Source: Hemiscyllium ocellatum (taxonomy: Eukaryota). Taken from it: a DNA stretch of 64,000 bases. The DNA is taken from NCBI RefSeq assembly GCF_020745735.1, contig NC_083445.1:7068001-7132000 (forward strand). Reading direction: 5' to 3'. This document shows, in pieces, positions 112 through 48,702 of the stretch (the first letter of the stretch is position 1; every line of letters starts with the position of its first letter). The notes beneath the pieces were generated by a model, which had not been told where the DNA came from, ran no database searches, and saw only the letters and a program-made list of their open reading frames with translations. The position numbers and the translations under genes are program-made.

Positions 112-245
112 CTGTGTTTTAGGAGCAGGGAAACCCAGAATAAGGCTGCCACAAAGAAAAACCCAGACATCACTAGATACAGCAGAGGCAGGGGGAACTC
201 GCCAGCTGAAAGGTAGGTCCTCGGATTCCTCGCCGTTATGTCAAT
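112..245 (-). CDS. GPR108: GPR108-like exon 9 (IDITARNPRTYLSAGEFPLP...TM1...LLKH+R)
   Basis: cacag acceptor, gtaatg donor, NP..YLSAGE.PLP motif plus first TM helix. Confidence 0.93.
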
Positions 246-3200
246 CTGTGAAGGAAAGTCTGAAGTGCTAAAGTACAGACTGTTGACTTTAAGGAAAAAA
301 AATGAATGACAATAGCAAATAATAAGAACCATCTGAGCTCCACTTATGCGCTGCCCGGTGTGTACCCAAGCTGGAATATAGTAGGTTTGAGCTTTTCAGG
401 AAGTTACTTTGATTAGCATGCCATCTGGACTTTGACACACTATCCTCACAACAGTACTTCATCTCATCTCAACTCACTAGTTTTTCAGCCCCAATACCTC
501 CTATGTATTTCTGTTACAAATACAAATAACAAGTTATTTTCAAACAAGATTATATAGGTCATTCAGAGTTAGAGTGTAGTTTCATTACAGATCACCCAGG
601 GAGTCAGAGTTGCTGTATTTGACATGTATATGTAGTCTGGGGGATGGAGAGATCTAAAAATGTTCCTTTACCTCTACCTCTCTCCCCCCGCCACAACGTG
701 GATAACCAGGAATCTCTCTGGTCTTACCACCTGCTGTTGGAGTGTTGGAAGAATTTGCAGACTGATACTCAACATGTTCGGCACGTTATATGTGGACCAT
801 CCTTGGCCATCATGGTTGGGCTTGGACTTGAGCTCCAAAAGGCTCGAGCTCAAGGGCACTACCACTTATCCACACAACCCTGCGTAGCTGGCACCAACAA
901 TTAAGAGTCAACCTTCGGAAAACTAAGATTACCTGATGTTGGCACCTGTCACAGTGAGAAGCCAATTAAGCGTGTTTTATTTAACATGCACATTCCAATT
1001 TGCATGAACTGCAAAGACACTAACTAGGAATTGAGCAAAAAATTTTATGGAACACAAGAGGCAATGGTGGGATCATAGGCAGCCGCTCAACCCCCCCCCC
1101 CTTGAGCTTACTCCTGTATTCAACCCGACCAGAACTGATCCGTATTTTAATTCTATCTACCTTCCTTGGTTTGTTGGAAAGCTAGAAATTTAAAGGCAAT
1201 TGAGGAGAAATCGATCTCCCATTTCCCCTTCCCCGTGACCTTCAACAAACATACTTACTGTCATGTCAAATGCAACAGCGTGTTTTTTCTCTGAAGGGAT
1301 CTTATGACAGTTGTGGAAGCTGAGTGTATAAAGACCTTCCTCTGCTGGGCTTAGAACCTTCACGAAGAACTGCGTGGAAGAATTACAAAATGGTACTAAG
1401 ATCGATACATATCTCTGGAAGCAATCAAGTTTTGTGAAGAAAAGATTCTTACATTGAAGGTGTAGCTTGCATTTACGTAGAGCAGTTCAAAAACTTCCTC
1501 GTTCTTTTCAGCTTTGCTCTGCAGAAGAAACAAATTTGATATAAGATACTGCAAAACACTTAATCCAGCACAGAAACTGACAGAACCACCATCCTAACTT
1601 TGTTACTGAAGCAAATAATCAGGGAGCAAACGGGTGACTGCACTATGGACAACTGCCACACACCCAACTTAAGGGTAAAAAGTGAGGTCTGCAGATGCTG
1701 GAGATCAGAGCTGAAAATGTGTTGCTGGAAAAGCGCAGCAGGTCAGGCAGCATCCAAGGAACAGGAAATTCGCCGTTTCGGGCATAAGCCCTTCATCAGG
1801 CTTATGCCCGAAATGTCGAATTTCCTGTTCCTTGGATGCTGCCTGAGCTGCTGCGCTTTTCCAGCAACACATTTTCAGCACACACCCAACTTAAACCTAG
1901 CCAAGCCCTTCGAACAGAAAGGTCACCCACTTCACCAGCTTTAGAGACTAACATTCAAAATGCATCAACAAGAAAACTGATGATCTACTGTTTACCTCAG
2001 CGCTGCTTTTGGTATCTTGCCTTATGCAATATCCCTACATTATGAAGCAATTGCATTTCGAGACACACAGTATTTTATTGAACTATAGTGAACTTCATAG
2101 ATTTCAAAGAAGTCTAAGAGGGGAGTTTGTTTCTACAGCTCAGGATCCCCCAGGTTCTCATCATTAATTAAAAGGAGTTATGTATTACACCTACACCACA
2201 CCAATAAAGTTCAACCTGGTATTAATAAAAAAACTGCACTGACAATTTCAATCTGTACTCCCTACTAGAATGCTAATTAGGCTCCACTGCTACTCCCTTC
2301 AAAGCTTTCTTGTTCTGCTCTGGCTCCAGCTCTCCACATCCTGAGAGAGGGTGAGATTGTAAAGGAGAGAGCAAGGGAGCACTTTCACAAACCAGACGAA
2401 TGCATACATACTCAACTCAACTATTGTCACTTTGTGGGTCAAAAGGCCTCCTCCAGTGCCGTACATTTTTATAACTCAAGGACCTAGTCACAGCTATGCC
2501 CATGCAAATGAATCTGACCCGCTCACTTCCTTCAGCTTGGAAATACTCATCCACAGAGACAATTCCCAGCTCCACTGCCAGACGAGGAGACGTACCAACC
2601 CAAAACATTTCCAAGTCTGGAGGCGGTAAAACGAGGCTAGTAATTCCACACAGTGTCTCTGTGACTCCCCTCTCCTGCCTTTCTCTGACACATCAGAACA
2701 ACCCTGCTCCCCCATCCTCACCCACCACCATATTTTCCACAAATGGTAACTTTAAATATCTGGTCAGTGCCATCTTTCCCAGGCAACCCCTTCCAATAAC
2801 AGCACCCATATATAATCTGCAGACAACCATCAAATTTGACCAAGGACCTCATGAAAACATTGATTTGACTTAATCAGTCACAACAAAATCAAGAAACCCC
2901 AAGAACTATTTCATACAACAGGACAGATTCTCAGATACAAATGAACAGTTGGTTAGGAAAAGCTATCTCCCTAATCTGGTAGGTGTCAGGGTCACTAGTT
3001 TGAGTCCAACTGCATTCTCTGGTTAGATAGAAGGTAACCATGCCAGTGCTGATACTCAGAGTAACCATTTTCTCTGAAGTAGAATTTGAACCTAAACATT
3101 TGATGCAATTGTAACGCTGCAGAGACCAACCTCTTTAACCGGCTGCACTTTTCCTTTTGACGCTTCTTTGGCCTTGCTTTGATCGGTTTCTCTTTTCCGT

Positions 3201-12200: not shown

Positions 12201-15200
12201 GCCTTTCATTATCCTGCATTCTGTTCCAACAACTCGGGTACAAATACTCTTGCAAACAGAGTCCAAGATGGAGCCCATTCGCAAGCCAGGGATGGCCTGT
12301 ACACTTTTCTCACACAGCACGAGTTTCCAGAAGCTTGAGGGTGTATGGATTAGGTAGAAAAGATCGCTTTATTTTTGTACAACCCTTCGTGCTCATTTTC
12401 AATTGCAACTCTGGCACATGGGGCTCCAGGGATACAACGAGGTAACATTGCAAGGCCAAATTAAAGTTTGACTGCTTCCAGTACCAACCACAGAAACCAG
12501 TTGGAACCAATGTCTCAGCCAGGGCCTGAATTGGGATGACCAACCACTCCAATCCTTGGTAATGTTCGACTCAATACATCAAGAAGTGAGGACAGCAGGT
12601 GCTGGAGATCAGAGTGGAGTGTGGGGTGCTGGAAAAGCACAGCAGGTCAGGCAGCACCTGAGGAGCAGGAGAATCGATGTTTCGGGTATAAGCCCTTTGT
12701 CAGGAATTCTTGAAGAAGGGCTTTTGCCCGAAATGTCGATTCTCCTGCTCCTTGGATGCTGCCTGACCTGCTGAGCTTCTCCAGCAACACACTCTCGACT
12801 TCCTCAACAAGTCAGCTTTGAAAGCTTAAAATAGGGAATCAACTCTTGGCTACACCCAAGTACAGTGATCAGAAATGGACTACATTTAGCTCCAAGTCTG
12901 CTATGAACTCCACCAGAGTCTAACAACTAATGGGGGAATATTAAATGACACTTCTTGCCAACCCAACTGTTTAGTGACTTCCATGCACACTTCTACATAT
13001 CGTGTTGTATGAGAACAGTGTGGGGAAATCCAATCTTTCAAATTGCTTTTATGGCTATAATTCAAAATGGTTACTTTAGGCAAAATACAAGCGCATAACA
13101 TTCTTCTCCTGAACAGGATGAACCAAGTCAGGCATTTTACTTTTTAATTCTTTGAGGGTACAGCATCAGCAGTTGTTACCTAATGCCCATTAAGCCTGGA
13201 GAAGATGGTTGTTAGCCATTTACAGGACTGCCCAGCAGCAGGGGGAAGCTTGGACAGGGGCAGGGAGGTCATTTCAAACTAAGCTTCGAACATTCGAGTA
13301 AGTCAGGACATTATTACTGTGGCACAGCGTTGAGATGGATTTCTAAACTACATTGCATTTCACCAAAACAACTCACTATGATCTTCCTCAAGTCAAGAGC
13401 TGTCTTTAATCGAAGATTCGTGAGGTTGACCTCCAAAGTCCCATTGGTGTTGAAGCCAAAGGTGTTCAAATGAACTTTCGATCTGGTGTCATCCTGAAAC
13501 GAGTAAAAATGAGATTAGCCCAGGGAGACATACTTATAGACTCGAAATATCATGCAATTCAAGGCTATCGGCCAAATGCAGATAAGTGGAATTGGTGAAA
13601 TTCAGTCAAATGGCTGAAACTCTTCTGCGCTGTATGACTCTAGATCATAGCATTTTAACCTGGATTTCATAGCCTCTAAGGGTCAGACAGATCGAGAAAC
13701 TCAATTCCATTTCCAAGAGGGATCGGCTGAGAAAGCTAGTCAGGAGAAAGCCACTTTTTTTTTTAAAATATTAACTGATAAATAACATTGAACAATCTCT
13801 CTGGTTCCTTAAAAATTCATGTTATGACTGCAGAACAAAAAAGAAAATTGATGCGGAAAATTTCTGTTTCCCCCTAGCCCTGTGGTTCCTTCGAAGTGCA
13901 CCATTTTCAATCAGATTTATTTTTCATTCCTTTGTACGACCTCATTAGGATTCCGCATGTCTCAGTGAGGATGGTCCAATCAGGTGGAGTCTCGTACCTT
14001 GTCATGTTCACAGTCACCCTTCAAGGTCACCACACTGGATCAGGTGCCAGATCTGTCTCATTTTGATGGATCTCAAGTTTACAGACAGTAAATCCACTGA
14101 CAACTTTGAAGGAACGCACAAAAACAAATTGCTGGAGAAATCCAGCCGGTCTGGCAGGCTCTGTGCTGAGAAAACAGTTCGCGTTTCCAAGTCCGGTGAC
14201 CCTTCAAAATGTTGACTGATTTTTCTCCACAGATGCTGCCAAACCTGCCGAAACTCTCCAGCAATCGCAGTTCTTTGCTTTACTTTAGATAAATTTAAGG
14301 AGTGTCTTGAAATGTAGCGTAGTGGCATGGTTAGGAAAGAATTCCAGAACATCAGGTCTAAGCTGCTGAAGGCATTGGTAGAGATTTTAAAATTGGACGT
14401 GTACAAGAAATAACAGAGTTAAAAATCACAACACCAAGTTATAGTCCAACAGGTTTAATTGGAAGCACTAGCTTTCGGAGCGACGCCCCTTCATCAGGTT
14501 CTGTGTTACGATCGAGCCCTCCACAATCACCTGATGAAGGAGCGTTGCTCCAAAAGCTAGTGTGCTTCCAATTAAACCTGTTGGACTATAACCTGGTGTT
14601 GTGTGATTTTTAACTTTGTACACCCCAGTCCAACACCGGCATCTCCAAATCAAGAAATGAGGCCATGGCTTCCAAACCGAAATGAGAATTTTTAAACTGA
14701 AGAGGCATCAGATCAGGAGCTAACGGGAATCAACGGTGACGGATGTAACAAGTGAACTGGACTCGATAACAGTCAGGATATTAGCAGGTGAGAAACGGAG
14801 GAGATCAAGTTTACATGGGGAAGTCAGAAGAGAGAAAGAGAATGGTATTTGATAGAAACGTCTCACTCATCCCCCAGAACAGGCTAGCCGAAGGGATTTC
14901 CACTGCTGCTGTTGGTTTGCGTTCAGATCTTAAGGAAGAGCAGGACTCGACTTGGTGACAAGACCCCCAGACTCGTACTCTGCTGTCACATCATCTAGAT
15001 TTAGGAATAGCCTTGTGGCGTTACCACAATAAAATTCCTGTAAACATGCATCACCATGAAAAGCACCCACGTCCACTTCCACAACATCACCCAATACCAA
15101 CACTGCCTCAGCTCAACCAAGGCTACAAATCTCATCTGTCATCTTGCTGTTTGAAGACCTGACTGTTCCTAGACACTCTCAGATTAGTTTGACTCTTTAC

Positions 15201-27000: not shown

Positions 27001-30000
27001 TCTCCCCCAACACACACCCCTCCCCCTCTTCCACACCCCCACACACACACCCCTCCCCCTCTCCCCCCCCACACACACACACTCCTCCCCCTCTCCCCCC
27101 ACACACACACCCCTCCCCCCTCCCCCCCCCCCCCACACACACACCTCTTCCCCCAACACACACCCCTCCCCCTCTTCCACCCCAAACACACACACCCCTC
27201 CCCCTCTAACCCCCCTACACACACACCCCTCCCCCTCCACACCCCTCCCCCTCTGCCCCCCCACACCCCTCCCCCTCTCCCCCCACACACACACACACCC
27301 CTCTTCCCCCCCCCACACCCCCTCCCCCCCCCCACACCCCTCCCCCCCCACACCCCTCCCCCTCTGCCCCCCCACACCCCTCCCCCTCACCCCCCACACA
27401 CACCCCTGCCCCTCTCCCCCCCACACACACACCCCTCCCCTCTACCCCCCACACACACACACCTCTCCCCCCACACACACACCCCTCCCCCCCCACACAC
27501 ACACCCCTCCCCCTCTCCCCCCCACTCACACCCCCCCACTCACACCCCTCCCCCTCTTCCCCCCCACACACACTCCTCCCCCTCTCCCTCCCACACACAC
27601 ACCCCTCCCCCTCTCCCCCCCACACACCCATCCCCCTCTCCCCCCACACACACACCCCTCCCCCCCACACACACCCCACCCCCCCACACACACCCTGCCC
27701 CTCTCCCCCCCACACACACCCCTCCCCTTCTCCCCCACACACACACCCCTCCCCCTCTCCCCCCCACACACACACACCCTACACACACCCCCCCACACAC
27801 ACACTACTCCCCCAACACACACCCCTCCCCCTCCCCCCCACACACAGACACACCTCCCCCTCTCCCCCCACACACACACACCTCCCCCTCTCCCCCCACA
27901 CACACACCTCCCCCTCCCCCCCCACACACACACCTCCCCCTCTCCCCCCCCCACACACACACACACCCCTCTTCCCCCCCTCCACACACACACCCCTCCC
28001 CCTCGCCACCCCCCCCACACACACACCTCCCCCTCTCCCCCCAACACACACCCCTCCCCCCCCACACACCCTCCCCCCCACAAACACTCCTCCCCCTCTC
28101 TCCCCCCCACACACACCCCTCTCCCCCCACACATACCCCTCCCCCCCACACACAACTCCGCCTCTTTTCCCCCCCCACCACCCAAACACAGACACACACA
28201 CACACACCCCTCCCCCTCTCTTCCCACCCCACACACACACCCCTCCCCCTCTCTCCCCCCCACACACCCACCCTCTCCCCCCCCCCACACACACCTCTCC
28301 CCTCCACACACCCCCTCCCCCTCTCCCCCCCCCACACACACACACCCCTCGCCCCCCCAAACACTCCCCTCCCCCTCACACACCCCCTCCCCCCACACAC
28401 ATCTGTCCCCCACCCCTCTCTCTCCCCCACCCACACATATCCCTGCCACACACCCTTCCCCCCAAACACCCCTCCCCCTCCCCCCCCCACACACCCCACA
28501 CCACTCACACACACCCCTTCTCCCCCCACACATCCCTCTTCCCCCCACACATCCCTCCTCCCTCCCCTGGACACATCCCCCCCCCTTCCCCCACACATCC
28601 CCCCCCCCTCCCCCCAACACATCCGCCCCCTTTCCCCCAACACATCCGCCCCCCCATCCCCCAACACATCCGCCCCCCCATCCCCCAACACATCCGCCCC
28701 CCCATCCCCCAACACATCCCCCATCCCCCAACACATCCCCCATCCCCCAACACATCCCCCATCCCCCAACACATCCCCCATCCCCCAACACATTCCCCCA
28801 TCCCCACAAACACACCATTCCCACTTCCCCCCCACACCCCTTCCACCCCTTCCCCCCACACCCCTTTCTCCCCCCCCACACCCCTTTCTCCCCCCCACAC
28901 CCCTTCCCCCCCCCCCCACACCCCCCTTCCCCCCCCCCACACCCCCCTTCCCCCCCACACCCCCCTCCCACCACACCTCCCTCCCCCCTCCCACCACACA
29001 TCCCTCCCCCCTCCCACCACACATCCCTCCTCCACCCCCACACCCTTCCCTCCCCCACACCACTCCCCCACCTGAGACACACCCCTCGCACCACAGACAC
29101 CTCCCTCCCTGCCACATACCCCTCCCTCCCCCCACATCCCTCCCCCTCTCCCCACACATCCCTCCCTCTCCCCCCACACATCCCCCTCTCCCCCCACACA
29201 TCCCCCTCTCCCCCCACACATCCCCCTCTCCCCCAGCACATCCTCCCTCCCCCACACACACCCCTCCCTCACTCCCTCCCCACACACACCCCTCCCTCCC
29301 CCACACAAACCCCTCCCTCCCCCACACACACCCCTCCCTCCCTCCCTCCCCCCCACACACCCCTCCCTCCCTCCCCCCCACACACCCCTCCCTCCCTCCC
29401 CCCCACACACCCCTCCCTCCTTCACCCCCACACAGCCCTCCCCCCCCACTCAGCCCTCTCCCCCAACACACACTCCCCCCCCCGCACACATACACACTCT
29501 TCCCCCCCCCCCCCGCACACACCCCGTTCCCCCCACGCACCCCCATTCCCCCCCACACACACACCCCGTTCCTCCCCCCCACACACACACACACACACAC
29601 ACCCCATTCCCCTCTCCCCCACACACACCCCACTCCCCCCACACACACACTCTGCTCCCCCCCACACATCCTGTTCCCCCCACACACAGCCCCTCTTCCC
29701 CCACACACACACCCAACCCATACACACACAGCCCCCTCCCCCCCCACACATACCCCATTCCCCCCCACACATCCTGTTCCCCCCACACACAGTCCCTCTT
29801 CCCCCACACACAGTCCCTCTTCCCCCACACCCACCCCTACACACACACACACCCCCCACACACACACACCACCTCCCCCACATACAGCCCCTTCCCCCAC
29901 ATACACACCCCACTTGCCCCACATACCCCAAGCACCTCCCCCACGCACCACCTTCCACATTTGCCCCCCACACTCTCCAGCAAACACTTTTACTCCATCA

Positions 30001-31305: not shown

Positions 31306-32017
31306 GACTCTGTGACCTCCGTCTCTCCATCTCTGTTCCTCTTCCTTCCTCTCCACTCACTTCCTGAGGGCACTGGGGGTCAGCCCAGAGCAGGTGAACT
31401 GCAGCAGTTCAGTAATGCAGCCCAGCAGCACATTCTGAAGGGGAGTTATGGACTGGCAGACACCCATATCTCATATACAAATAAAATTAATCTCTCCAAG
31501 TTAAAAATGCCCTGAGTTTCTTTCTGGGTCAGTTAGTCTTGAATGTTGAGCATCGTTGTAAGGTTACAAAGCTGGAGAAGAATGAGGCCATGGATTGATT
31601 GGAAAACCAGGGTGTGTATCAGTTTAAAAAGGCCAGGTTTTACATATATGGTCCACTCACTGCATTGAGTTTCACAAGATTTGTTTGTTTTGTTCATGGA
31701 ATCAGATGTTTTTTTTTGTTAGTGTTATTTTCTCTATAATAATAAATGTGCCTTCGTTTTCCACTGGTGAGATGTTATGTTTTAATATCTGATGTTTTTG
31801 CATTTTTCTCTAGGATAGCAAGACCGTATTAAATTCCTTCCTTAATCTCTAAACCAAATGTTCTTCGTATTTTGGTTTTGGACTCGAACTGGATTAAATA
31901 CTATTGTTTTGATAAAACCATTTCATGTTGATTTGGTGCATGCCCACCTTTTTAGGAAAAATCGCGTCTTTGTTTTAAAGAAAAAAACTTTGGCCACTTT
32001 ATGGGGAATAAAGCACT

Positions 32018-32240
32018 ATGGCCTCAGCTTCAGGTAGTAGCGATGATGACTTAACCATTCCAAGAGCTGCCATCAACAAGATTATCAAACAGATTCTACC
32101 AAATGTCAGGGTAGCAAATGATGCCAGAGAAATGGTGGTGAATTGCTGCACTGAATTTATCCACCTAGTATCCTCTGAAGCTAATGAAATCTGCAATAGA
32201 TCGGATAAGAAAACCATCTCACCAGAACATATCATGCAAG
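32018..32240 (+). CDS. DR1: DR1-like coding exon 1
   Basis: actATGG start, CAAG|gtatgt donor, histone fold. Confidence 0.95.
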
Positions 32241-35200
32241 GTATGTGTTAATCTATAGAAATACACTTTGGAATTGCAGCAATGTTTTCTCCCTGCCTTC
32301 AGCTCACAACTGAAGTTTGTGTATGATTATTCATGCCATCACCCATGTGACCATTCTTCAGCTCAATGTCAGTAACAGCTTCAGAGACAGAAATCATGCA
32401 AGTTAACAGGGAATGCTGTACTTTTGAAGATGTCACACATCAAAGTAAACATTAAGGTTAAGGTCCGTGTACCCCTGTTGCGTGGGTGTGAAAGTTTCCA
32501 TTCATTGAACAGACCTCCCTGGTCAGTATTTATCCTTTAACCAGTGCCTGATGGATGACAGCTGATCTGATTCTTTCCAGTTTGTGGGAGCTTGCTGCCC
32601 AGTGTGTTACTATATTTCCTATGTTGCAGCAGTGACCACATCTCAAAAGTTTTTTTTTTAAATTCATTCATGGGATGAGGGTGTCAAAGGCTGGGTAACA
32701 TTTATTTCCCATTCCTCATTGCCCAGGATTCAAATTTCACCATCTTCCATGGTGGGATGTGAACCCGGGTCCCGCGAACATTACTCTAGATTAACAGTCC
32801 AGTGATAAGTCCAAACAGTGTCAGCAGCTGTTAGGTTGTTAGGTTCCCCAGAACTCAATCACTGGATATTCAGTCTAACAACAATACCACTAAAGTCATT
32901 GCTGTCCCTGTGGCATTAAGTTTATCAACTTGGCATACTTCAATAGTCTTCTACACCTTATTGTGCAGCTGGACACAGAGGGGGAAATAATTCTGGTTAT
33001 AGTCTGCACTTCATGTCCTCTCAACCTAACAGCTGCTGACACTGTTTGGACTTATCACTGGACTGTTAATCTAGAGTAATGTTCGGGGGACTCGGGTTCA
33101 AATCTGACCACAACTTTGAATTCCGTAACAGTTAAATCCTAAAACCATATGGTTCACTAATGTCCTTCAGAGAAGGAAACTACCACTCAACGGCAGCAAT
33201 GTAATTGACTCTGAAATGGACAAGAAAGCCATTGACTAGAATTCAACCAGTCTCAAAAAATAAATGAAACTGGACAGACACAGGCCATCTGGAATCCCCT
33301 AAGGCTCAGAAATGATCACAATAAAGCCTGGTGTCCCTGTAAAGTCCTCCTTTCTCACATCTGGGCTTAGTACTAAAATTGGGAGAGTAATCTCTCAGGT
33401 TGGTCAAGCAGCAGCCTGACATCATACTCTCGGAATCATCCCTTACAAAGTCCCTGACAACACTGTTGACATCCATTCCTTTCCCAGGGGCAGGACAGAC
33501 CCAGGAAGGCTGATGGCTGTGGTGCACAGTCTACAGGGAGTTGCCCTTGGAGTCCTCCAAACCTGACTCCAAATCCCATGAATTCTCATCGAACCAGGTG
33601 GGGAAGGTAGTGCAATTGGGCTCAGGCATAGGAATGATCACAATAAAGCCCTGATGTCCCTGTAAAGTTATTCTTACAAACCTCCGGGTGCTCCGGTTTC
33701 CTCCCACAGTCCAAAGATGTGCGGGTCAGGTGAATTGGCCATGCTAAATTGCCTGTAGTGTTAGGTAAGGGGTAAATGTAGGGGTATGGGTGGGTTGCGC
33801 TTCGGCGGGTCGGTGTGGACTTGTTGGGCCAAAGGGCCTGTTTCCACACTGTAAGTAATCTAATCTAATTTGGGGTGAATACTAACCTCGGATGATTATG
33901 GATAGTATGTACATTCTCCCCGTGTCTGAGTGGTCTCCTTCCCTAGACTAAGGAGCTAGAAAGATCAGCTTGTGTTCTCGATTCAAGTTGTAATTTGGTG
34001 ACTCCGTTGACAGTGTGGAAATCGAACGAGGATAGGATCTAATCTGGCTGTACTGCCCTCAAAATGTTTTGTTGGCACTGTCATAAGTTCGCATAATGGT
34101 CACTTGGGTAAGATACTGAAGATAGCTTATACACTTGGAATGACCACAGCTGAAGTGTTTTGGAAAGGCAAAATGCCAGAAGAAAGTGAATGAAATGAAT
34201 TTGAAATGAAACTGAACACAGCTGGTTCTCTACATGAATATGAATAGATTTTGATATCCAACTGTTGAGTTTAAATCAATACCCAACAAAAGTGTAGAAT
34301 TAAATCATAAACCCGTCTGTGAATACAAAGATTTTGATATCGGATTTGTCAGGTCTAAATTAATATGCAGCAGAGATCTTTTGCAGAGCCAGGGGAATGT
34401 CACAACATGCTTTGTGTTACCTTGTGCAACAGCCTTGCAAAGTCTAGGCTTTGGATCGTACATAGCGGAAGTAAAGGAAGTTCTGCGGGAATGCAAGAAA
34501 GTTGCCTTAGAAAGGAGAAAGGCGAACGCTCGCTTAGAGAACCTTGGCATACCAGAGGAGGAACTGCTACGCCAACAACAAGAGTTGTTTGCAAAAGTAA
34601 GGAAACCTGCTCAATATTTTTGACATGTATCACTACGTTTCAAGTAAGTTGCCCCCAACTTTACAAAATTGGAGCTTATAACCAACTATACCACACTCAG
34701 CCCCACTTGCGTTCACCTTCTAGGCAGACTGTAAAATCTGAGTTTGACTGTTAATCAATTGTTCTTTATTTCACCTGCCTCATAACCAAAATTGATACGA
34801 GAGGCATTATACAGAATTCATCTAGACTTCTTGCCTTGATTATCACTGAAGGCAAAGCCCATCATTAAGAGACTTTTGAGGAAATATGATGACTTGAAAT
34901 GCCTCATGTTCTGGAGAGGCTGTGTGTGTGTTTGTGTGTGTGTGTGTGTATCTGTGTGTGTGTCTCTCAACTCTACCATGACTGTTGTCTCATTTTTTTT
35001 CAACTACTGGGGCAACTGAATGGGTTGTCCTGGCTGGATTCATTTTGACCTGGTGAAAGAGAAGTATTTAATACAATTACACATCACAGGAAGCCATATT
35101 TAGCTCATCATGCCTGGGCTGGCTCATTGAAATAATTTAGTCCTACTCTCCTGCTCTTATCGCACAGCCCCACAAGTTTCTGTTTTTGAGTGTTTATCTT

Positions 35201-38200: not shown

Positions 38201-39849
38201 ACTCCCAGATTATGGGGTTTAAAAAGAACATGCTGTGCAGGTGTAGGCCATTTGGCACAGCTGGTCCATATTGGTGTTCATGTTGTATGTGAGTGCCCTC
38301 CCATCCTTAACTCCTCTCGGTCATTCTGTCAGCATTTTCTTCCTTCTGCAGGTACCTGTCTAGCTTCCCTTCAAAAGTGTTTAATCCAGAATTTAGAACA
38401 GGCAAGAAGTGGATGGTGGGGGGCTGTCATGATTAGAGTGGTGCTGGAAATGCACCGTAGGTCAGGCAGCATCCAAGGAGCATGAAAATCCTGATGAAGG
38501 GCTTTTGCCCGAAAAGTTGATTTTTCCTGCTCCTCGAATGCTGTCTTACCTGCTGTGCATTTCCAGCACCACTCTAATCGCCAGCATCTGCAGTACCCAC
38601 CTCTGCCAAGAAGTGGATGGTGTCAGAGTAGCAGAGAGTTTAACAAAGATTTAAAGTTGAGGAAGATGGATGTGGTAGGCTTGAGTGAAATCATGAAGGG
38701 AGTTGTTTGGGATTTTGTAATTAGTTTCTTGGGGTCAAGAAAATCATGGAATCATTTCAAAGGGAAGAACTAAGCTTGAGTCATGGCATTTTGACGGAAT
38801 ATTACTTTTAAAAACTAGCAAGAAGAGTATTTTGATGGTAATGCTGAAGGTAATAGTAGCACAAAGTAGACAGTGATTGCCAGAACATAGTTAACACTTC
38901 CCAGGAGGACATTAGCAGTGATGAGGAGCTGCTGGGTAAACATGCTGAGAGAATCAGTTGTGCTAGAATTGGAAAGCATGCTACAGACCAAGGTTTCAAC
39001 TTGAGACATTACTGATATGTTCGCTCACTCTCCCCCCAATGTTGAAGTTACTCACTGTAACCAAAATAAGGAGCTCCGAAATCAATCTGTCCCTCTCCCT
39101 GTCATAGATTTGTACCTGTTGAGCAGGTTGAGCTTCTCTGGTATTCAGAATTGTGAAAGTGAGCTGTCACTGTTACGAGAGAATTTCAGTCTGCGTGCTC
39201 ATCCAGCATTTGCAGATGTCTATCCGCGACTGGGATTTGATATCCTCACCTGTGACTGAGGCAAGAGAGAGTGCTTCACACTGACCCATGGCTGAAAACT
39301 TGAAGGTACGGCACTAGTGAAATTTCATCTCAACACAAGATAATTGAATGAGGACAGGGGCAAGGAATTGAGAGGAATACTCAGATTTCGAGTTGACCCT
39401 AAGGTGATGATGGAGGCTGCTTTGTAACTTCTATCTGGAAAGTATTGCCTCCTTGTAGACCTCATACTCTGTGTAATAAGTCACATAAGTCCCTAAAGTA
39501 CATATCGCAACCAAACTGGATGCATGCTAGAGTGGCAATTTCAATAGGTTTCTCATCAATATTATTTGTGTCAAGGAGGGTGGAGTTAGATATAGAGCGA
39601 GATCTCTCCCACTGTTTTCCCCACTCCACCCCCACCCAAACAAGATTCCCGTCCCACCCACCAGGGAGATTTACTTTGAACCCCAGCCTGACTTTCTCCA
39701 TTTGCCCTCAGGCTCGCCAGCAGCAGGCAGAACTGGCACAGCAAGAATGGTTACAGATGCAACAAGCTGCCCAGCAGGCACAGCTCGCAGCAGCATCCGC
39801 CAACAAGGCTGGCTCCTCTCAGGACGAGGAAGAGGAGGAGGACCCCTAG
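32018..39849 (+). CDS. DR1: DR1 / NC2-beta family histone-fold TBP repressor, 174 aa; join(32018..32240,34433..34596,39712..39849)
   Basis: 223+164+138 nt, GT-AG introns, no internal stops. DDDLTIPRAAINK...NCCTEFIHL...|ALQSLGF...RLENLGIPEEELLRQQQELFAK|ARQQQAELAQQEWLQMQQAAQQAQLAAAS...QDEEEEEDP*. Family is certain; may be a paralog rather than the orthologue. Confidence 0.95.
33681..33868 (+). mobile_element. 5'-truncated V-SINE
   Basis: Matches the 3' half of the 35399 copy. Confidence 0.85.
34433..34596 (+). CDS. DR1: DR1-like coding exon 2
   Basis: caacag acceptor, AAA|gtaagg donor, 164 nt. Confidence 0.95.
34921..34963. repeat. (TG)n microsatellite
   Basis: Interrupted TG run. Confidence 0.9.
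35399..35712 (+). mobile_element. Full-length V-SINE (HE1-like) in DR1-like intron 2
   Basis: gggcggcacggtggcacagtggttagcactgc head, V-domain, tail. Confidence 0.9.
38419..38606. mobile_element. Palindromic Penelope-like element, family A variant, 16-bp TSD
   Basis: caagaagtggatggtg at 38403-38418 and 38607-38622. Confidence 0.78.
39712..39849 (+). CDS. DR1: DR1-like coding exon 3 (Q/A-rich repression domain, acidic tail)
   Basis: ctcag acceptor, TAG at 39847-39849. Confidence 0.95.
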   Translation, partial: ARQQQAELAQQEWLQMQQAAQQAQLAAASANKAGSSQDEEEEEDP

Positions 39850-40252
39850 AACCCAGTTCAGGATGTCTCACTCCCCTTCCATCTACCCGTGTCCTGCGAT
39901 ATTCACAGTGGCAACATAGATGGTCATCAGTGGACATCTATTCATGTCCACAACTGGAGACTGAAATGTCAGCTGTGAAATTTTAATAGACCAGCCTAAA
40001 ACAGGAGGAAAAATAACGTGGTTTCAGTCTTTGGTCTTCAGACTTGCTGGATTTAAAAAGTGACATGGTCTGAGATGGACAATATACCCTCCTGGATCTT
40101 CAGGCCATAACATGGATTTTTATACATGTGAACTTTTGGTTAATTGGAGTGAAATATTAAACAGATAATGTTCCTGTTGAACATGTATTTTGTGGGTTTC
40201 ATTAACGTGTTAGGTAATTGAAGATGAAGTTGCCTTGTTTACAGGAATGAAA

Positions 40253-40258
40253 AATAAA
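40253..40258 (+). terminator. Probable polyadenylation signal of the DR1-like gene
   Basis: AATAAA ~400 nt after the stop, followed by T/GT-rich sequence. Confidence 0.6.
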
Positions 40259-41429
40259 AGAGAAGTAGACATTCCTTTGTGTCTGTAACACTTTTTTTGC
40301 AGCTTTTCATTAGTGTTTAATTACATTCTATCTTTCCTTTTATAACGAGCATTTCTGAATTGTTTCTTGTGATGCTGAGTCATGCTTGTCCTTAATTTGC
40401 TGTCTGAAGGGGAGCATTGCTTTGCAGTTACTTTGTTGGGTTGATGGGGGATGCTGGATTTCTTTCAGAAAACATTATGGTTTGCTGGGCCCATTGAGAG
40501 TTGCGAAGGCTCCCTTCCCTGAAGGACACTAGGTCTGCATTTGGTGCTAATTGGGCAGCATTCAAGGCTGCTCGTTGGATGCTGCCTGAACTGCTGTACT
40601 CTTCCAGCACCACTGATCCAGAATCAAGGCTATCTGTAACCAAGGGAGAACAGTCCCTGTATCTGTGGGTGGGACAGTACCTGTCGACAGTCTCACCTGT
40701 AACACTGCATCCTTGATATCGGAAGGATAATGATAGTGGTGGAAATTAAAAATGTTAAGCAGTCTTTACCCCTCATTAAGTGGAACTCAAACACCCAGAG
40801 GAAAAGACTTATTTTGTAGCTGGTACAACCTGCTTTTAAGTTCCACTGAAGTACAGCAGAGGAAACTAGCTATTTTAAACGTCACGTCAAAACTATAATT
40901 CCATTTCAAATTGTTTTTATGCCTTTTAATTGACTTCTAAATCATTGAATGTTTCAGTAAGCAGTGGGAATTAACTGGAAGGCTATAATTAATCCTTGTC
41001 AATATTTTAATTTCCATCTAAGTTTGCAGAAATTACAGGGGAGCCGATTTTTATTTTTCTTTTGGCTTTTCATTATAAGCAGCAGGTAGCTCCTAAATCT
41101 CAGCTGCCAAGAGCAACATTTAGCCCTGCTGTGCTGACCAGACAGCTTCCAGTTGGAATCCCCAGTGCTGAGTTTGCTGATTTCTCAAGACAGCAGTTGA
41201 GAGTTTACTCTTGCTTTCGGAGTATCCCTGCCCCTGTAGGTGCCAGGGAGTTTCTTGCGTTCCAACCTTTTTGCTCCGATCAGCCAACACATAGTGCAAT
41301 GAGTGCTACAAGTGAGGAGTATGAAGAGCATAAGGCTCCAAATGATAGCCTCTACCCCTGAGGAGGAGATGAGAGAACGCCACCACCACGTGCAAGTTTC
41401 CCTTCAAGCCACCAACCACTCAGCTTGGA

Positions 41430-44380: not shown

Positions 44381-47300
44381 CTTTGTAGTCAACAAGTCTA
44401 TTGATGCTGACTGCCCAGGCTTATGCAAGAAATGACTTCTCCCCGAGGATCATGGGTACCTATTGTATATGTAGAGGGCGATAGAAATATTTATAAATTA
44501 AACCAAATGTTGCTGTGAGAAAGATCTGGAAGTTGTATGTCTGAAGGAACTGGATTCTCGTGAATGAGTGCACTTTTACTGCACACCATTAGGTGGCATT
44601 AAGTATACAGACTGTGAAGTTCCTTTTGAATACATCCTCATAGTTTTCTGGGTTTATTTAAACATATGTTGAACAATCATTGCTGGATGGCGTGCAGCAA
44701 TCAGCACATATTAAACTGATTATATTCTGTGCATGAAATACTGAATGATACTTACAATAAATTCCAAGCATATCTGTGGAAGTACTAATTATTGTACATC
44801 ATAGCTCAAAAATGCTGTTTATGATATACCAGTTCTTTATATTGTGTGTGAGAGAGGCCAGGCAGACTATTTTACTTTTGGTACAACAATGAAAATTCAT
44901 ACACGTGTACATTCCAGCATTAACAATCAAAGATGGTAAAACCTCCTCCCTTTTGCCTAAGGACTACAAGCCAATGATTACACTAGCCCTGTAATCTCAG
45001 CCAGCTCCTCACTACCTGAAACTGTCCTTGTGCTGCACTAAATGGTTTTGTTGCATTTACTTGCTGGGGAACCCAAAACAAATCTTACACTAATCTGTAA
45101 TGAGCTGTTACCCGCAATGCAGCCAAATAACTGTGCAATGACTATTGAGGTTAATTTCAGATGTACATTACACCAACCAGGCCAGGAGTTAGATCTTCTT
45201 GTTTCCCCCCCCCCCCCCCCTTTAAAATGTTGGTTAGGTGGGTTTGTTTTATGACAAAGATGTGGTAGTTTCATGGTCATCATGTCTAATATGACTTTTG
45301 TTATTCCAGATTGATTTAATTAATTGAAGTTAAATTCCCCAGCTGCTCCCTTTTTGAACTCATTGCTGATTCATTAGTACAAAGCTAAGGGATTATTGAT
45401 CTGCTGACATAGAAATTATACCATCGAACATTTTACGTACTTCCCAATCTCACCTGTGGCTGCTGCTTGTAACTGTACTGACCAAGGAATGGGTACCTTC
45501 TCGTCTACCTATTCAGAGATGTTATGACACATTTCTAGAGCGTGCAGGATTTGAACCTAGACCTCCTGGTTCAGAGGAAGAGACACTACCAATGTGCCAC
45601 AAGAACCCTTGCTGTAATGAAATGTCACATTTGTCTGTTTTGTGCCACCCTAAGCCACAATCTCAGTGAATATTGGAGAAAATTCAATGGCTGAAAGGCC
45701 TATGTCCAATCCTACAACTTATGCTCACACAGCCAGCATGGCTCTTCTGCAACCATGGAGTCATACAACACTGAAGAGACCCTTCAGTCCATTGTACCTA
45801 TGCTGACCTATCTACACTAATCCCACTTTCCAACATTTGTCCTATAACCTTGAAAGCTATGACATTTCAAATGCCCACCCAACCAATTCTACAGATTGTG
45901 GGGTTTTCCTGCCTCAGGTCGCATCCGATGTAGTCTGGAATGGTATGTAGGCCACACCAGGTAAGGATAACAGCTTCCTTCCCTCAAGGACATTAGTGAA
46001 CCAGATGGATTTTCCTGACAATTGGCAGTGGATTCATGATCATCACTAGACTCTTAGTGTCAGATTTTTATTGAGTTCAAATTCCACCATCTCCTGTAGC
46101 AGGACTTGAACCTAAGCCATCCTCTGTCTTCAGGATTACATCTGTTACCTTTTGTTATCATTTGTTCAAAATAGACAACTTACTGACTTGTTCCAGGCTT
46201 CACTCTAGTCTCTTCCAACGTATTCCTACGAACTGCAATTCTTTTTATCCATTCGCTGACATTCTTACCACGCGGTGGTTAAAAGTTCCTTCTGGATTCC
46301 CTGTGTAATGTCGCAGGGTCATAACTGCGTGGAATCTATGATGGTTGTATATAGACTGATCCAATCAGTCCTATTCTCCAACTATATATCCATAGACCTG
46401 TGGGTTTATTTCCCTCAAACACCCATGGCATTTCCTTTTGCAACACAGCTCCAGAATATGAGGCTGTGGAATTGATTTCCTCGTCATTACTGTTAATCTT
46501 GTAACAACCATTCGATGAAGGAGAAGAAGCAAAGTCAATCTTTGCTCAGTTTCGATTTATATAGCTCCCAAACTTTCTTTCGACTCCACTGTCAGTCAAT
46601 ATCTCTTCCTATTTGCTCAAAAGTGATTTTCTGGTGCAGTGGTAGTGTCCTGACCTCTGCACCAGAGGGTCCAGATTCAAATCCCACCTACTCCCTATCT
46701 GAAAAGGTTGGTTAATTCTTCCTCAAAGAACTATATTTGGTCAAATATAGAATTCCTTTCACCTGTTTATCCTGACTCAACATTTATGCAATTACCAAGT
46801 ATCAATTGTCTCTATCTCTCTCACATATTTCTCCACCTCAAACATATCTTCACCCAAAAATTTAAATCTGTGGTGCCGAGTCATTCTACCTTGATTGATG
46901 GGAAATTTGTGTCTTTGTCCACCCTTTCTCAGCTTATCACAATCTTGTACACCTCTATCAGGTCTCCCTTTGTTCAAAAAAAAAACAAACCTAGCTTCTC
47001 CAACCTAACCTTGTAACTAAAATCCCTTATCCCTGGAACCATCTTGGTAAGTCTGTTCTGCACAGCCCTACCAAATTAGACATCCTTTCAATATCTTGTG
47101 ACTATTTATATTTAAGTTTACTTGTCTATACATTGTGAGAGATTACTCTGTTCACTGTTTTGATGTTGTTCTTTGTGGCAATCTTAGACCATAATCAAGT
47201 CTACAGTCTATCCTACTGTATCTGCAACATATAGGCAACTTATAAGCTACTTCCCACTTCTTCTGAGATATAATTAAGGAAAGTATGTAGATTATCATGA

Positions 47301-47996
47301 CAGCCAGGCAGGTATAACGACCACAGAGTGTCTCTTGCATTCCTGACGCTGTTGGGATGTTGTGTATAATCCACACTGAGATGGACTGCGGGGATTGTGA
47401 ACAGAAATGAAAGCCCATCAATGATGGGAGAATTCACGAGCTGTCACTTTCCCTTGCACCCGTGCACTTTAAAAAGGATGTTAAGTCTTTGGAGAGAGTG
47501 CAGCAGAGATTTAACAAGCAACGAACGCTTTTGGTTGTCTGCAGAGATTTTTAATTGGAATAAAAACAGAAAATGCTGGAAATACTCAGCAACTCAGGCA
47601 ATACCTGTGGAGACAGAAACTGGTCAGGTCAATAACCTTTCAGCAGACATTAGATTTGATCTCCTTGGACAGGCGAAGGTTAGAGGGATTGAAGAAAGGT
47701 GTCTAAAATCTGGAAAGGTTTTCACAGAGATGATCGAAAGATACTGTTTCTACTGAAAGTGAGAAGGCTATTTCAGATTCCTGCAACTTCCACAGTTTGG
47801 CTTCCATTTAGCACAGCAGAACTGAGTCAGAAAATTGAAAATTAACAAGGTAGAAAGGACTAACTAACACTGAGACGAGACAGTCTGTTATGTCTTCCCC
47901 CACCCACAGCCAAGCAATCTCCTGGGAATAGCAAGTCAAAACAGGGGTAAACCCAAACCCCATTGTGGGGGATGAGGGAAAAATATACTCAGGGAG

Positions 47997-48163
47997 AAGT
48001 CCAAAGATGTGCGGGTCAGGTGAATCGGCCATGCTAAATTGCCCGTAGTGTTAGGTAAGGGGTAAATGTAGGGGTGGGTTGCGCTTCGGCGGGTCGGTGT
48101 GGACTTGTTGGGCCGAAGGGCCTGTTTCCACACTGTAAGTAATCTAATCTAATCTAACCTAAT
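47997..48163 (+). mobile_element. 5'-truncated V-SINE
   Basis: 3' half with (taatc)n tail. Confidence 0.85.
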
Positions 48164-48379
48164 CAATCCTCTCTGACCTTGCTGTCAGTATTAATTCAGA
48201 AGATTTCATGATGCAGGTGATGTTGGTGAATATTTGTCTTTTATGTGGCGTGGGCTCATTTGACAGTGGCAGTGCCTTACCTCTGAGCCAGGAGGCCCAA
48301 CTGTGCTAGGGTGAGGGTGTCCCTTTAACAACACCAGCCGTGTACACCTTGCTGCAGATAGGGTGCTTGTTGTGTTAGT

Positions 48380-48490: not shown

Positions 48491-48678
48491 AGAAATGTTT
48501 ACAGTTTAAAGGATGCCAAGCACACCATTCATATAGGGAGCAGTTTCTGTAATCAAATTCAACCATAGGACAAGAGACCGGACCAAGTGAGTGGAGAAAC
48601 AAAAAAGGAAATTAACAAAGAGACTGCTGAGCAATCTTCTCTCTCCCCAGCCTGAATTAAAGGCAGAGTTAAAACATC

Positions 48679-48702
48679 ATGGAGTGGGGTTCGGAGCTTT
48701 GG
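48679..48702 (+). CDS. TRIP10: First coding exon (MEWGSELW) of an F-BAR gene, TRIP10/CIP4-like (FNBP1/FNBP1L family); no further exon identified in the window
   Basis: atcATGG Kozak, 24 nt, then a perfect gtgagt donor. Matches the family's 8-codon first exon (TRIP10 MDWGTELW, FNBP1/FNBP1L MSWGTELW). CpG-richer patch just upstream; synteny with GPR108. Confidence 0.78.

What the first reader, a model, noticed from the sequence alone, without database searches (positions are those of the whole stretch)
112..48702. Intact ancestral GPR108(-)/DR1(+)/TRIP10(+) triad: probably a second DR1 (NC2-beta) ohnolog that mammals lost
Seen: a GPR107/108 gene on the minus strand, an intact DR1 on the plus strand, then an F-BAR first exon (MEWGSELW) on the plus strand. 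Established (human gene order, from memory): GPR108 is head-to-head with TRIP10 (19p13), GPR107 is head-to-head with FNBP1 (9q34), and the single DR1 lies upstream of FNBP1L (1p22) with no GPR107/108 beside it. Inference: these are whole-genome-duplication copies of one three-gene block and this shark locus keeps all three. The DR1 here would then be a retained paralog on the GPR108/TRIP10 segment, giving cartilaginous fishes an alternative NC2-beta subunit for the NC2 and ATAC complexes.
Basis: partly seen in the sequence, partly recalled or inferred. Interest (0 to 1): 0.85.

Follow-up and report, generated by a model that had tools for sequence, protein, structure and literature searches.

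The report
Second DR1 gene kept by sharks
Sharks, rays and chimaeras carry a second, intact copy of the transcription regulator DR1 (NC2-beta) between GPR108 and TRIP10, under strong selection; it is probably an ancient genome-duplication copy that no bony vertebrate protein seen here matches, and databases list it only as 'Dr1-like'.

Summary
The window contains the 5' half of a GPR107/108-family gene (minus strand), an intact three-exon DR1 gene of 174 aa (plus), and the 8-codon first exon of an F-BAR gene (plus).

- **Two DR1 genes.** The genome has exactly two. The window copy (DR1a) is identical to RefSeq 'protein Dr1-like' of Hemiscyllium ocellatum. A more human-like copy (DR1b) lies on contig C9, directly upstream of FNBP1L.
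- **F-BAR gene is TRIP10.** It groups with teleost trip10b (96/92). AU tests reject FNBP1L (p 0.006) and FNBP1 (p 0.011).
- **Three paralogous blocks.**
  - C188: C3-like/GPR/DR1a/TRIP10/SH2D3.
  - C9: DR1b/FNBP1L/SH2D3.
  - C56: GPR/FNBP1/SH2D3.
- **Distribution and constraint.**
  - DR1a occurs in more than 20 chondrichthyan species, including the chimaera Callorhinchus.
  - dN/dS is 0.06-0.09.
  - It is seen as spliced mRNA in a skate.

Synteny therefore supports a retained genome-duplication copy. The short DR1 protein tree does not confirm this: it weakly prefers a duplication within cartilaginous fishes (91/84), and the older split is not rejected (AU p 0.15-0.23). GPR108 identity rests on position only. 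The two assembly gaps lie in GPR intron 1 and touch no exon. The scan had already noted this DR1-like gene on the same window (s1-172632).

The parts
111..245 (-). GPR108-type gene, exon holding the end of the luminal domain and TM1 (…YLSAGEFPLP…)
   Evidence: Open exon with an AG acceptor and a GT donor. The gene continues left of the window with GOST_TM hits and eight further open exons.
1259..1369 (-). GPR108-type gene, luminal-domain exon (…EEGLYTLSFHNC…)
   Evidence: AG/GT-bounded open exon.
1453..1518 (-). GPR108-type gene, luminal-domain exon
   Evidence: AG/GT-bounded open exon.
13377..13493 (-). GPR108-type gene, exon 2 (…KVHLNTFGFNTNGTLEV…)
   Evidence: AG/GT-bounded, in phase with exon 1.
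22807..22896 (-). GPR108-type gene, exon 1: start codon and signal peptide
   Evidence: ATG, a hydrophobic leader and a GT donor. Head-to-head with DR1a, 9.1 kb away.
20392..22650 (.). Two assembly gaps (21245-21512 and 22352-22650) with a 99-100% inverted repeat around the first; lies inside GPR intron 1
   Evidence: No exon lies here. Probable assembly artefact.
24012..29910 (.). About 6 kb of C-rich minisatellite (period about 29-30) in the GPR/DR1a intergenic region
   Evidence: Tandem Repeats Finder score 3423, GC skew -0.98. It explains the spurious 2108-aa ORF at 23744-30070.
32018..32240 (+). DR1a (NC2-beta paralogue), coding exon 1: most of the histone fold
   Evidence: ATG to GT donor. 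129 bits to 1JFI_B.
34433..34596 (+). DR1a coding exon 2: end of the histone fold, the ERRK motif and the helix that contacts TBP in canonical NC2-beta
   Evidence: AG/GT borders. 87 bits to 1JFI_B.
39712..39849 (+). DR1a coding exon 3: Q/A-rich region, acidic tail and stop codon
   Evidence: AG acceptor and TAG stop. The whole product is identical to P0473, 'protein Dr1-like [Hemiscyllium ocellatum]'.
48679..48702 (+). TRIP10 (CIP4) coding exon 1, MEWGSELW
   Evidence: ATG, 8 codons and a GT donor. Joins exon 2 at C188:7203787 in frame, giving a 329-aa F-BAR region with all GT/AG borders. Typed as TRIP10.

Best explanation
The window holds the 19p13.3-type paralogous block of a cartilaginous fish. 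The gene order is complement-C3-like genes, GPR108 (minus), DR1a (plus), TRIP10 (plus) and an SH2D3-family gene (minus).

DR1a is a second NC2-beta gene. It most likely arose when an ancestral GPR-DR1-FBAR-SH2D3 block was copied by the early vertebrate genome duplications. Cartilaginous fishes kept DR1 in two of the three surviving blocks: DR1b next to FNBP1L and DR1a next to TRIP10. Bony vertebrates kept only the copy next to FNBP1L.

Shown here:
- two intron-bearing DR1 genes with identical intron positions;
- their equivalent positions in paralogous blocks;
- presence of DR1a in sharks, rays and a chimaera;
- strong purifying selection on DR1a;
- spliced DR1a mRNA in a skate.

Inferred, not tested:
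- DR1a still pairs with NC2-alpha (DRAP1) through its histone fold and clamps TBP on DNA through its conserved exon-2 helix.
- It therefore gives an alternative NC2 (and possibly ATAC) subunit.
- Its fixed changes (about eight residues, including KRRK to ERRK) may alter import or partner choice.
For: Copy number and structure:
- Exactly two DR1 loci, each with three coding exons. Intron positions are the same in DR1a of four species and in DR1b.

F-BAR (CIP4-family) genes:
- Three such loci exist.
- C9 is FNBP1L, 80-100% identical per exon to a catshark FNBP1L.
- C56 is FNBP1, the best match for every exon of a frog FNBP1.
- C188 is TRIP10 (tree 96/92, AU tests). Its PDB matches to human CIP4 exceed those to FBP17.

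Flanking genes:
- SH2D3-family exons lie convergent to all three F-BAR genes.
- Only two GPR107/108-type loci exist, next to TRIP10 and FNBP1.
- ANATO (C3-like) hits lie on C188, 100-260 kb beyond GPR on its strand. This matches the published tetrapod order C3 / GPR108-TRIP10-SH2D3A / VAV1 (PMC11118497).

Other species:
- The GPR/DR1a/F-BAR triad is annotated in Amblyraja.
- GPR/DR1a is annotated in Carcharodon.
- Callorhinchus has both DR1-then-F-BAR pairs.
- DR1a-type proteins occur in more than 20 chondrichthyan species, and each species checked also has canonical DR1.

Selection and expression:
- dN/dS is 0.093 against Stegostoma and 0.056 against Amblyraja. Synonymous sites between DR1a and DR1b are saturated and nucleotide identity is 74%.
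- An uninterrupted 525-nt DR1a-type ORF sits on contigs of about 2.1 kb from 88 run assemblies.
Against: - The DR1 protein tree joins chondrichthyan DR1a and DR1b against bony-vertebrate DR1 (97/90; 91/84). This is the topology expected for a duplication inside the chondrichthyan stem. It rests on about 3-4 sites, mostly in the low-complexity tail. The alternative topology is not rejected (AU p 0.146 and 0.229), so the tree does not support the 2R date.
- No invertebrate or lamprey DR1 was available to root the tree.
- The single hemichordate F-BAR locus examined has neither DR1 nor a GOST gene within 10 kb, so linkage before the duplications is not shown.
- Absence of DR1a in bony vertebrates rests on limited evidence: ranked hit lists, one grouper trip10b locus, and a paper that does not mention DR1.
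- Expression in this species could not be tested at read level.
- Binding to NC2-alpha and TBP was not tested.
Confidence: 0.7

Rival explanations
1. DR1a is a lineage-specific duplicate. In the stem of cartilaginous fishes, a DNA-level copy of DR1 alone, with its introns, landed between GPR108 and TRIP10. It has been kept since. Bony vertebrates never had it.
For: The DR1 protein tree places DR1a as sister to chondrichthyan DR1b (97/90; 91/84). No DR1a-type protein from a bony vertebrate appeared among the best hits.
Against: - The copy would have had to land, in the same orientation, exactly upstream of the paralogue of the gene that follows the parent copy. Both DR1 genes lie directly upstream of, and on the same strand as, a CIP4-family gene that is itself followed by an SH2D3 gene.
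- A joint DR1+FNBP1L duplication is excluded, because the F-BAR gene is TRIP10.
- The tree signal is 3-4 tail sites and the alternative topology is not rejected.
- Synonymous sites are saturated.
Confidence: 0.2
2. The GPR gene is not GPR108 but GPR107 or a third GPR107/108 genome-duplication copy, so the block is mislabelled.
For: No GPR107/108 reference proteins could be fetched, so no tree was built. The transmembrane exons are very conserved and resemble both human genes as recalled from memory.
Against: - Only two GPR107/108-type loci exist in the genome.
- One is head-to-head with FNBP1 on C56 and the other sits next to TRIP10 and SH2D3, with C3-like genes beyond it.
- This matches the published GPR108 neighbourhood (PMC11118497).
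- From memory only, several diagnostic residues (INYYFI, AALAFTKSIS, FHNC, QWQW) match human GPR108.
Confidence: 0.07
3. DR1a is a decaying or unexpressed copy, or an annotation artefact.
For: Read-level expression in this species was not obtained. The two run assemblies of this organism that hold its 3' exon are only guessed to be RNA.
Against: - The frame is open and splice sites are canonical in four genomes.
- dN/dS is 0.06-0.09.
- The gene has been conserved since before the shark-chimaera split.
- Spliced mRNA contigs are found in 88 run assemblies of a skate.
Confidence: 0.02

Closest known systems
Human DR1 / NC2-beta (PDB 1JFI chain B; subunit of the NC2 and ATAC complexes)
   Same: - Histone-fold protein of the same length class.
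- 129 and 87 bits to 1JFI_B over exons 1 and 2; about 87% identity over the first 143 residues to a mammalian DR1.
- Same three-coding-exon structure as the genome's canonical DR1b.
- Most of exon 2 is unchanged from canonical DR1 (ENLGIPEEELLRQQQELFAK is identical), and the Q/A-rich region and acidic tail are kept.
   Different: - Lies next to TRIP10 rather than FNBP1L.
- About eight clade-wide substitutions: M21I, T25I, L38M, E62D, V71I, I72M, Q92R and K100E, the last turning KRRK into ERRK.
- One extra N-terminal residue and a 3-residue shorter tail.
- Evolves faster than the near-invariant canonical gene.
RefSeq models named 'protein Dr1-like' in sharks, rays and chimaera
   Same: The window's product is identical to XP_060711149.1 (P0473). 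Orthologues occur in Stegostoma, Rhincodon, Chiloscyllium, Carcharodon, Scyliorhinus, Heterodontus, Heptranchias, Pristiophorus, Pristis, Amblyraja, Leucoraja, Rhinoraja, Mobula, Hypanus, Hemitrygon, Narcine and Callorhinchus.
   Different: These are automatic names that carry no statement of origin. The paralogous-block reading given here was not found in the searchable literature.
Canonical DR1 of the same genome (DR1b, C9)
   Same: Same exon structure, 86% protein identity, and the same position relative to a CIP4-family gene and an SH2D3 gene.
   Different: - DR1b is 98-100% identical across chondrichthyans and about 96% identical to tetrapod DR1 in exon 1.
- Its gene spans 28 kb, against 7.8 kb for DR1a.
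- It has no GPR107/108-type neighbour.
The three vertebrate CIP4-family genes (TRIP10, FNBP1, FNBP1L) and their neighbours as 2R paralogons (human 19p13 / 9q34 / 1p22; human positions from memory)
   Same: The shark has the same three F-BAR genes, each followed by an SH2D3-family gene. Two of them are preceded by a GPR107/108-type gene.
   Different: The TRIP10 block here also carries a DR1 gene, which the published tetrapod GPR108-TRIP10 neighbourhood does not list.

Membership tests
DR1 / NC2-beta | Histone-fold domain of the CBFD_NFYB_HMF type, closest to NC2-beta rather than NF-YB or POLE3 | tested here: met
   1JFI_B scores 129 bits against 44-47 bits for the next hits (yeast Bur6/NC2 and NF-YB). 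Precomputed Pfam PF00808 on the identical protein's cluster.
DR1 / NC2-beta | C-terminal extension beyond the histone fold: the helix that contacts TBP in 1JFI, then a Q/A-rich region and an acidic tail | tested here: met
   Exon 2 aligns to 1JFI_B residues 78-131 with the segment ENLGIPEEELLRQQQELFAK unchanged. The Q/A-rich region and acidic tail are present. That this helix contacts TBP is from memory of the 1JFI paper.
DR1 / NC2-beta | Forms a heterodimer with NC2-alpha (DRAP1) and binds TBP-DNA | not tested
   Inferred from sequence conservation only. No complex prediction or assay was run.
DR1 / NC2-beta | A functional gene: open frame, canonical splice sites, purifying selection, transcription | tested here: met
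   frames and splice sites in four species; dN/dS 0.06-0.09; spliced mRNA in a skate. Transcription in this species itself was not shown.
2R ohnologue retained in one lineage | The two copies occupy equivalent positions in paralogous blocks whose other genes are accepted ohnologues | tested here: met
   DR1a-TRIP10-SH2D3 on C188 and DR1b-FNBP1L-SH2D3 on C9, in the same order and orientation. The third block, GPR-FNBP1-SH2D3, is on C56. The same two pairs occur in Callorhinchus.
2R ohnologue retained in one lineage | The gene tree dates the split before the divergence of cartilaginous and bony vertebrates | tested here: inconclusive
   The best tree joins the two chondrichthyan copies (97/90 and 91/84). 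The 2R topology costs 2.5-3.3 log-likelihood units, AU p 0.146 and 0.229. Hagfish was the only outgroup.
2R ohnologue retained in one lineage | Absent from the other lineage (bony vertebrates) | tested here: inconclusive
   No bony-vertebrate protein with the DR1a signature appeared among the 120 best hits. There is no DR1 beside grouper trip10b. This was not an exhaustive genome search.
TRIP10 / CIP4 orthologue (downstream gene) | Groups with named TRIP10 and not with FNBP1 or FNBP1L | tested here: met
   Clade with eight teleost trip10b proteins, support 96/92. AU p 0.006 (with FNBP1L) and 0.011 (with FNBP1). No tetrapod TRIP10 was in the tree. The link to human CIP4 comes from PDB scores. 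The HR1 exon scores slightly higher to Xenopus TOCA-1.
TRIP10 / CIP4 orthologue (downstream gene) | F-BAR (FCH), HR1 and SH3 architecture, with an SH2D3-family gene convergent downstream | tested here: met
   Exons for all three domains were found. SH2D3 exons at C188:7265152-7274804 are 54-72% identical to the gene that flanks grouper trip10b.
GPR108 orthologue (upstream gene) | GOST_TM seven-transmembrane domain of the GPR107/108 type | tested here: met
   Pfam hits. Open transmembrane exons. The neighbouring product in Amblyraja and Carcharodon carries GOST_TM and is 556 or 566 aa long.
GPR108 orthologue (upstream gene) | Groups with named GPR108 rather than GPR107 in a tree | not tested
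PDB has no relative. The Atlas search on one exon was uninformative.
GPR108 orthologue (upstream gene) | Conserved neighbourhood C3 / GPR108 / TRIP10 / SH2D3A | tested here: met
   against PMC11118497. The only other GPR107/108-type locus pairs with FNBP1.

The most novel reading that the evidence does not exclude
DR1a is not a redundant spare. It is the beta subunit of a distinct, chondrichthyan-wide NC2 (or ATAC) variant. Its fixed changes (KRRK to ERRK, four core histone-fold substitutions, a shortened tail) would alter nuclear import or partner choice. That would give cartilaginous fishes a second TBP-regulating complex with its own tissue or developmental role, one that existed in the first jawed vertebrates and was lost in the bony-vertebrate line.
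Probability: 0.25. Interest if true: 0.6.

Novelty: new member of a known kind. Interest (0 to 1): 0.45.

Why it matters
NC2-beta is treated as a single-copy, nearly invariant general transcription regulator in vertebrates. A second copy kept under strong constraint since before the shark-chimaera split shows that the early jawed-vertebrate toolkit for controlling TBP was larger than the mammalian one. It also offers a natural variant, ERRK in place of KRRK plus histone-fold core changes, for probing NC2 import and partner specificity.

For genome evolution, the locus is a compact and clean example of a paralogous block. Four gene families (GPR107/108, DR1, CIP4-type F-BAR, SH2D3) lie in three copies with complementary losses. 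This helps to anchor the 1p22 / 9q34 / 19p13 paralogon in cartilaginous fishes.

The gain is modest. Ohnologues kept by sharks and lost by mammals are a known class, and this gene is already in RefSeq under an automatic name.

Tried and rejected
- **Genome DNA allowance.** The C9 and C56 paralogues could therefore be typed only from coordinates and per-exon identities, not from their sequences.
- **Expression reads.** The single read-laying run was lost to a filter, so there is no read-level expression or splice test in this species. The two small run assemblies of this organism that hold the DR1a 3' exon are only guessed to be RNA.
- **GPR typing.** The PDB has no GPR107/108 relative. An Atlas search with one 44-aa GPR exon returned ion-channel fragments and was uninformative.
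- **F-BAR references.** The representatives search with F-BAR exon 2 returned mostly exon-sized fragments and no TRIP10 cluster. TRIP10 references came only through a mis-modelled turbot protein. An alignment of all F-BAR exons to that protein (A1) was misaligned and discarded.
- **Synteny look-ups.**
  - The Stegostoma DR1-like locus is collinear with window 31561-48289, but a tandem repeat fills its last 1.5 kb, so TRIP10 exon 1 was not reached.
  - The hemichordate F-BAR locus has no DR1 or GOST gene within 10 kb.
  - The cavefish dr1 locus shows no F-BAR gene within 10 kb.
  - Look-ups of two teleost trip10b isoforms found no record.
- **Readings rejected.**
  - The C9 copy is not a retrocopy. 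Its 176-aa open frame is a coincidence, and the copy has two introns.
  - The C54 hit is an NF-YB-type gene, not DR1.
  - There is no third GPR107/108 ohnologue.
- **Not attempted.** The middle luminal exons of the GPR gene were not traced.
Full report
**What is in the window.**

The window is G000:C188:7068001-7132000.

- **DR1a.** On the plus strand an intact DR1 gene has coding exons at 32018-32240, 34433-34596 and 39712-39849, all with GT/AG borders, and a 174-aa product. The product matches human NC2-beta (PDB 1JFI chain B) at 129 bits for exon 1 and 87 bits for exon 2. This is far above the NF-YB-type hits.
- **GPR gene.** On the minus strand lies the 5' half of a GPR107/108-family gene. 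Exon 1 with the signal peptide is at 22807-22896 and exon 2 at 13377-13493. Later exons are at 1453-1518, 1259-1369 and 111-245. The gene continues left of the window with eight further open exons and Pfam GOST_TM hits. The middle luminal exons were not traced.
- **F-BAR exon.** The first F-BAR exon (MEWGSELW, then GT) is at 48679-48702.

**The assembly gaps.**

Both N runs (21245-21512 and 22352-22650) fall inside GPR intron 1. Exon 1 ends in phase 0 and exon 2 follows in frame. The first gap is the centre of a 99-100% inverted repeat (20392-21233 against 21513-22351). The second gap begins exactly where the right arm ends. This looks like an assembly artefact. It makes the intron length unreliable but touches no coding sequence.

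**How many DR1 genes.**

Searching the whole genome with DR1 exon 1, and then with a full skate DR1, finds exactly two DR1 loci and one NF-YB-type locus. The second gene (DR1b) lies at C9:96250149-96250370, 96228546-96228725 and 96221989-96222150, on the minus strand. It has the same three-exon structure and encodes a 177-aa protein identical to the 'protein Dr1' of Chiloscyllium and Rhincodon. It is clearly the more human-like copy: 96% identity to tetrapod DR1 in exon 1, against 84% between the two copies.

**Typing the F-BAR gene.**

- I followed the gene rightwards. Nine exons from 7116679 to 7218790 give a 329-aa F-BAR region with every border GT/AG. HR1 and SH3 exons follow, ending at 7245474.
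- The genome holds three genes of this subfamily.
- The C9 gene (95988729-96081808, minus) is 80-100% identical per exon to a catshark FNBP1L.
- The C56 gene (54412588-54564856, minus) is the best match for every exon of a frog FNBP1.
- The window's gene matches neither closely (48-56%).
- In a maximum-likelihood tree it joins eight teleost proteins named 'thyroid hormone receptor interactor 10b / cdc42-interacting protein 4 homolog' with support 96/92. AU tests reject placing it with FNBP1L (p 0.006) or FNBP1 (p 0.011).
- Against solved human domains, its F-BAR exons score higher to CIP4 than to FBP17 (55 v 33, 50 v 45 and 44 v 41 bits). Its SH3 exon finds only CIP4 (72 bits). The HR1 exon is slightly closer to Xenopus TOCA-1 than to CIP4 (60 v 55 bits).
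- The gene is therefore TRIP10.

**The paralogous blocks.**

- DR1b lies directly upstream of FNBP1L on the same strand, about 140 kb away. DR1a lies 8.8 kb upstream of TRIP10 in the same way.
- Downstream of TRIP10, on the opposite strand (C188:7265152-7274804), are exons 54-72% identical to the SH2+RasGEF gene that flanks grouper trip10b. A search with one of these exons finds exactly three loci, each convergent to one of the three F-BAR genes: C188:7271802, C9:95943328 and C56:54337040.
- A transmembrane exon of the GPR gene finds only one paralogue (86% identity). It lies at C56:54687876, head-to-head with FNBP1. So there is no third GPR107/108-type gene.
- ANATO-domain exons, as found in complement C3, C4 and C5, lie at C188:6778220 and 6933505 on the GPR strand. 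A published synteny analysis places GPR108, TRIP10 and SH2D3A between C3 and VAV1 in amphibians, non-avian reptiles and mammals (PMC11118497).
- The three blocks therefore read:
  - C188: C3-like / GPR / DR1a / TRIP10 / SH2D3.
  - C9: DR1b / FNBP1L / SH2D3.
  - C56: GPR / FNBP1 / SH2D3.
- The simplest history is one ancestral GPR-DR1-FBAR-SH2D3 block copied as a whole, followed by complementary losses.

**Distribution.**

- The database holds DR1a-type proteins, automatically named 'protein Dr1-like', from orectolobiform, lamniform, carcharhiniform, heterodontiform, hexanchiform and pristiophoriform sharks. It also holds them from skates, stingrays, a sawfish, an electric ray and the chimaera Callorhinchus. 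Each species checked also has canonical DR1.
- One of these proteins, XP_060711149.1 of Hemiscyllium ocellatum, is identical to the window's product. It sits on a contig of 33,323,899 bp, which is the length of C188.
- The whole triad is annotated in the skate Amblyraja: a 556-aa GOST_TM gene, DR1-like, and a 555-aa FCH-HR1-SH3 gene. GPR/DR1-like is annotated in the white shark.
- In Callorhinchus, DR1a is followed after 2.4 kb by a 540-aa F-BAR gene. Canonical DR1 is followed after 9.9 kb by a 558-aa F-BAR gene. The upstream neighbour of DR1a there is an importin-like gene, not GPR.
- Both DR1-then-F-BAR pairs thus predate the shark-chimaera split.

**Is it functional?**

- DR1a has the same intron positions in four genomes.
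- dN/dS is 0.093 against Stegostoma (dS 0.24) and 0.056 against Amblyraja (dS 1.18).
- Between DR1a and DR1b, synonymous sites are saturated and nucleotide identity is 74%. This argues against recent gene conversion.
- A DR1a-type protein is encoded as an uninterrupted 525-nt ORF on contigs of about 2.1 kb from 88 public run assemblies. Since the genomic gene has two introns, these contigs are spliced mRNA. The protein belongs to the skate cluster.
- The whole clade shares M21I, T25I, L38M, E62D, V71I, I72M, Q92R and K100E (KRRK becomes ERRK), one extra N-terminal residue and a shorter tail. The segment after the histone fold, ENLGIPEEELLRQQQELFAK, is unchanged.
- I infer that DR1a still dimerises with NC2-alpha and acts on TBP, perhaps with altered import or partner choice. 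None of this was tested.

**The weak point.**

- The DR1 protein tree does not give the topology expected for a 2R split. Chondrichthyan DR1a and DR1b join against bony-vertebrate DR1 (97/90 with 20 rows; 91/84 with 37 rows).
- The signal comes from three or four sites, mostly in the low-complexity tail. Hagfish is the only outgroup.
- The 2R topology is only 2.5-3.3 log-likelihood units worse (AU p 0.146 and 0.229). The tree is therefore inconclusive.
- A duplication of DR1 alone in the chondrichthyan stem remains possible. It would need the copy to land in the same orientation at the equivalent position of a paralogous block. I put that at about 0.2, against 0.7 for the block-duplication origin.

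**Comparison with what is known, and verdict.**

DR1a is a member of the DR1/NC2-beta family by fold, extension and gene structure. It is already present in RefSeq as 'Dr1-like'. Searches of the literature library found no paper describing a second vertebrate DR1 or this block. It is a new, well-supported member of a known kind: an ohnologue kept by cartilaginous fishes and apparently lost by bony vertebrates. The GPR108 label rests on position alone.

Noticed in passing
window 24012-29910: About 6 kb of C-rich minisatellite (unit about 29-30 bp, CCCCCCCCACACACACCCCTCCCCCTCT; almost no G on the plus strand, GC skew -0.98) fills most of the 9-kb interval between the GPR and DR1a starts. It creates spurious ORFs of up to 2108 aa on both strands.
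   Followed up: partly
window 20392-22351: Near-perfect inverted repeat (655 nt at 99% plus 188 nt at 100%), symmetric about the first N gap and ended by the second. Probably a fold-back assembly artefact inside GPR intron 1.
   Followed up: yes
C188:7265152-7274804 (right of the window; loci L021-L022): Exons of an SH2+RasGEF (SH2D3-family) gene on the minus strand, convergent to TRIP10. Exactly two paralogous loci follow FNBP1L (C9:95943328) and FNBP1 (C56:54337040).
   Followed up: yes
C188:6778220-6778327 and 6933505-6933609 (left of the window): Two ANATO-domain exons on the minus strand, suggesting one or two complement-C3-like genes beyond GPR. Further ANATO hits lie at C56:51452288 and three places on C113.
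   Followed up: no
C9:96228546-96228725 (locus L027): Canonical chondrichthyan DR1 has cysteine where other vertebrates have glycine or alanine (LGFCSY rather than LGFGSY or LGFASY), in all three species aligned.
   Followed up: no
window 34433-34596: The basic KRRK motif of canonical DR1 reads ERRK in nine of the ten DR1a proteins aligned (Narcine keeps KRRK). Another first-stage note calls KRRK the import signal; I did not check that role.
   Followed up: partly
C188:7116702-7203787: TRIP10 intron 1 is 87 kb long. An additional exon at 7226968-7227129 aligns to the optional linker segment of FNBP1L and FNBP1 and may be alternatively spliced. The exon or exons between 7240607 and 7242790 were not resolved.
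   Followed up: partly
locus L033 (Callorhinchus milii, MU249859.1): In the chimaera, the gene upstream of DR1a is an 886-aa importin-beta-like gene rather than GPR108. The whole DR1a gene spans only 1.2 kb, against 7.8 kb here.
   Followed up: no
window 5597-6277, 16815-17060, 57341-57550 and many others: Numerous short ORFs recur in both orientations (motifs such as …LLGCCLTCCAFPATHFQL… and …WNELPEEVVEAGT…). They look like fragments of interspersed repeats that fill the introns and intergenic DNA.
   Followed up: no
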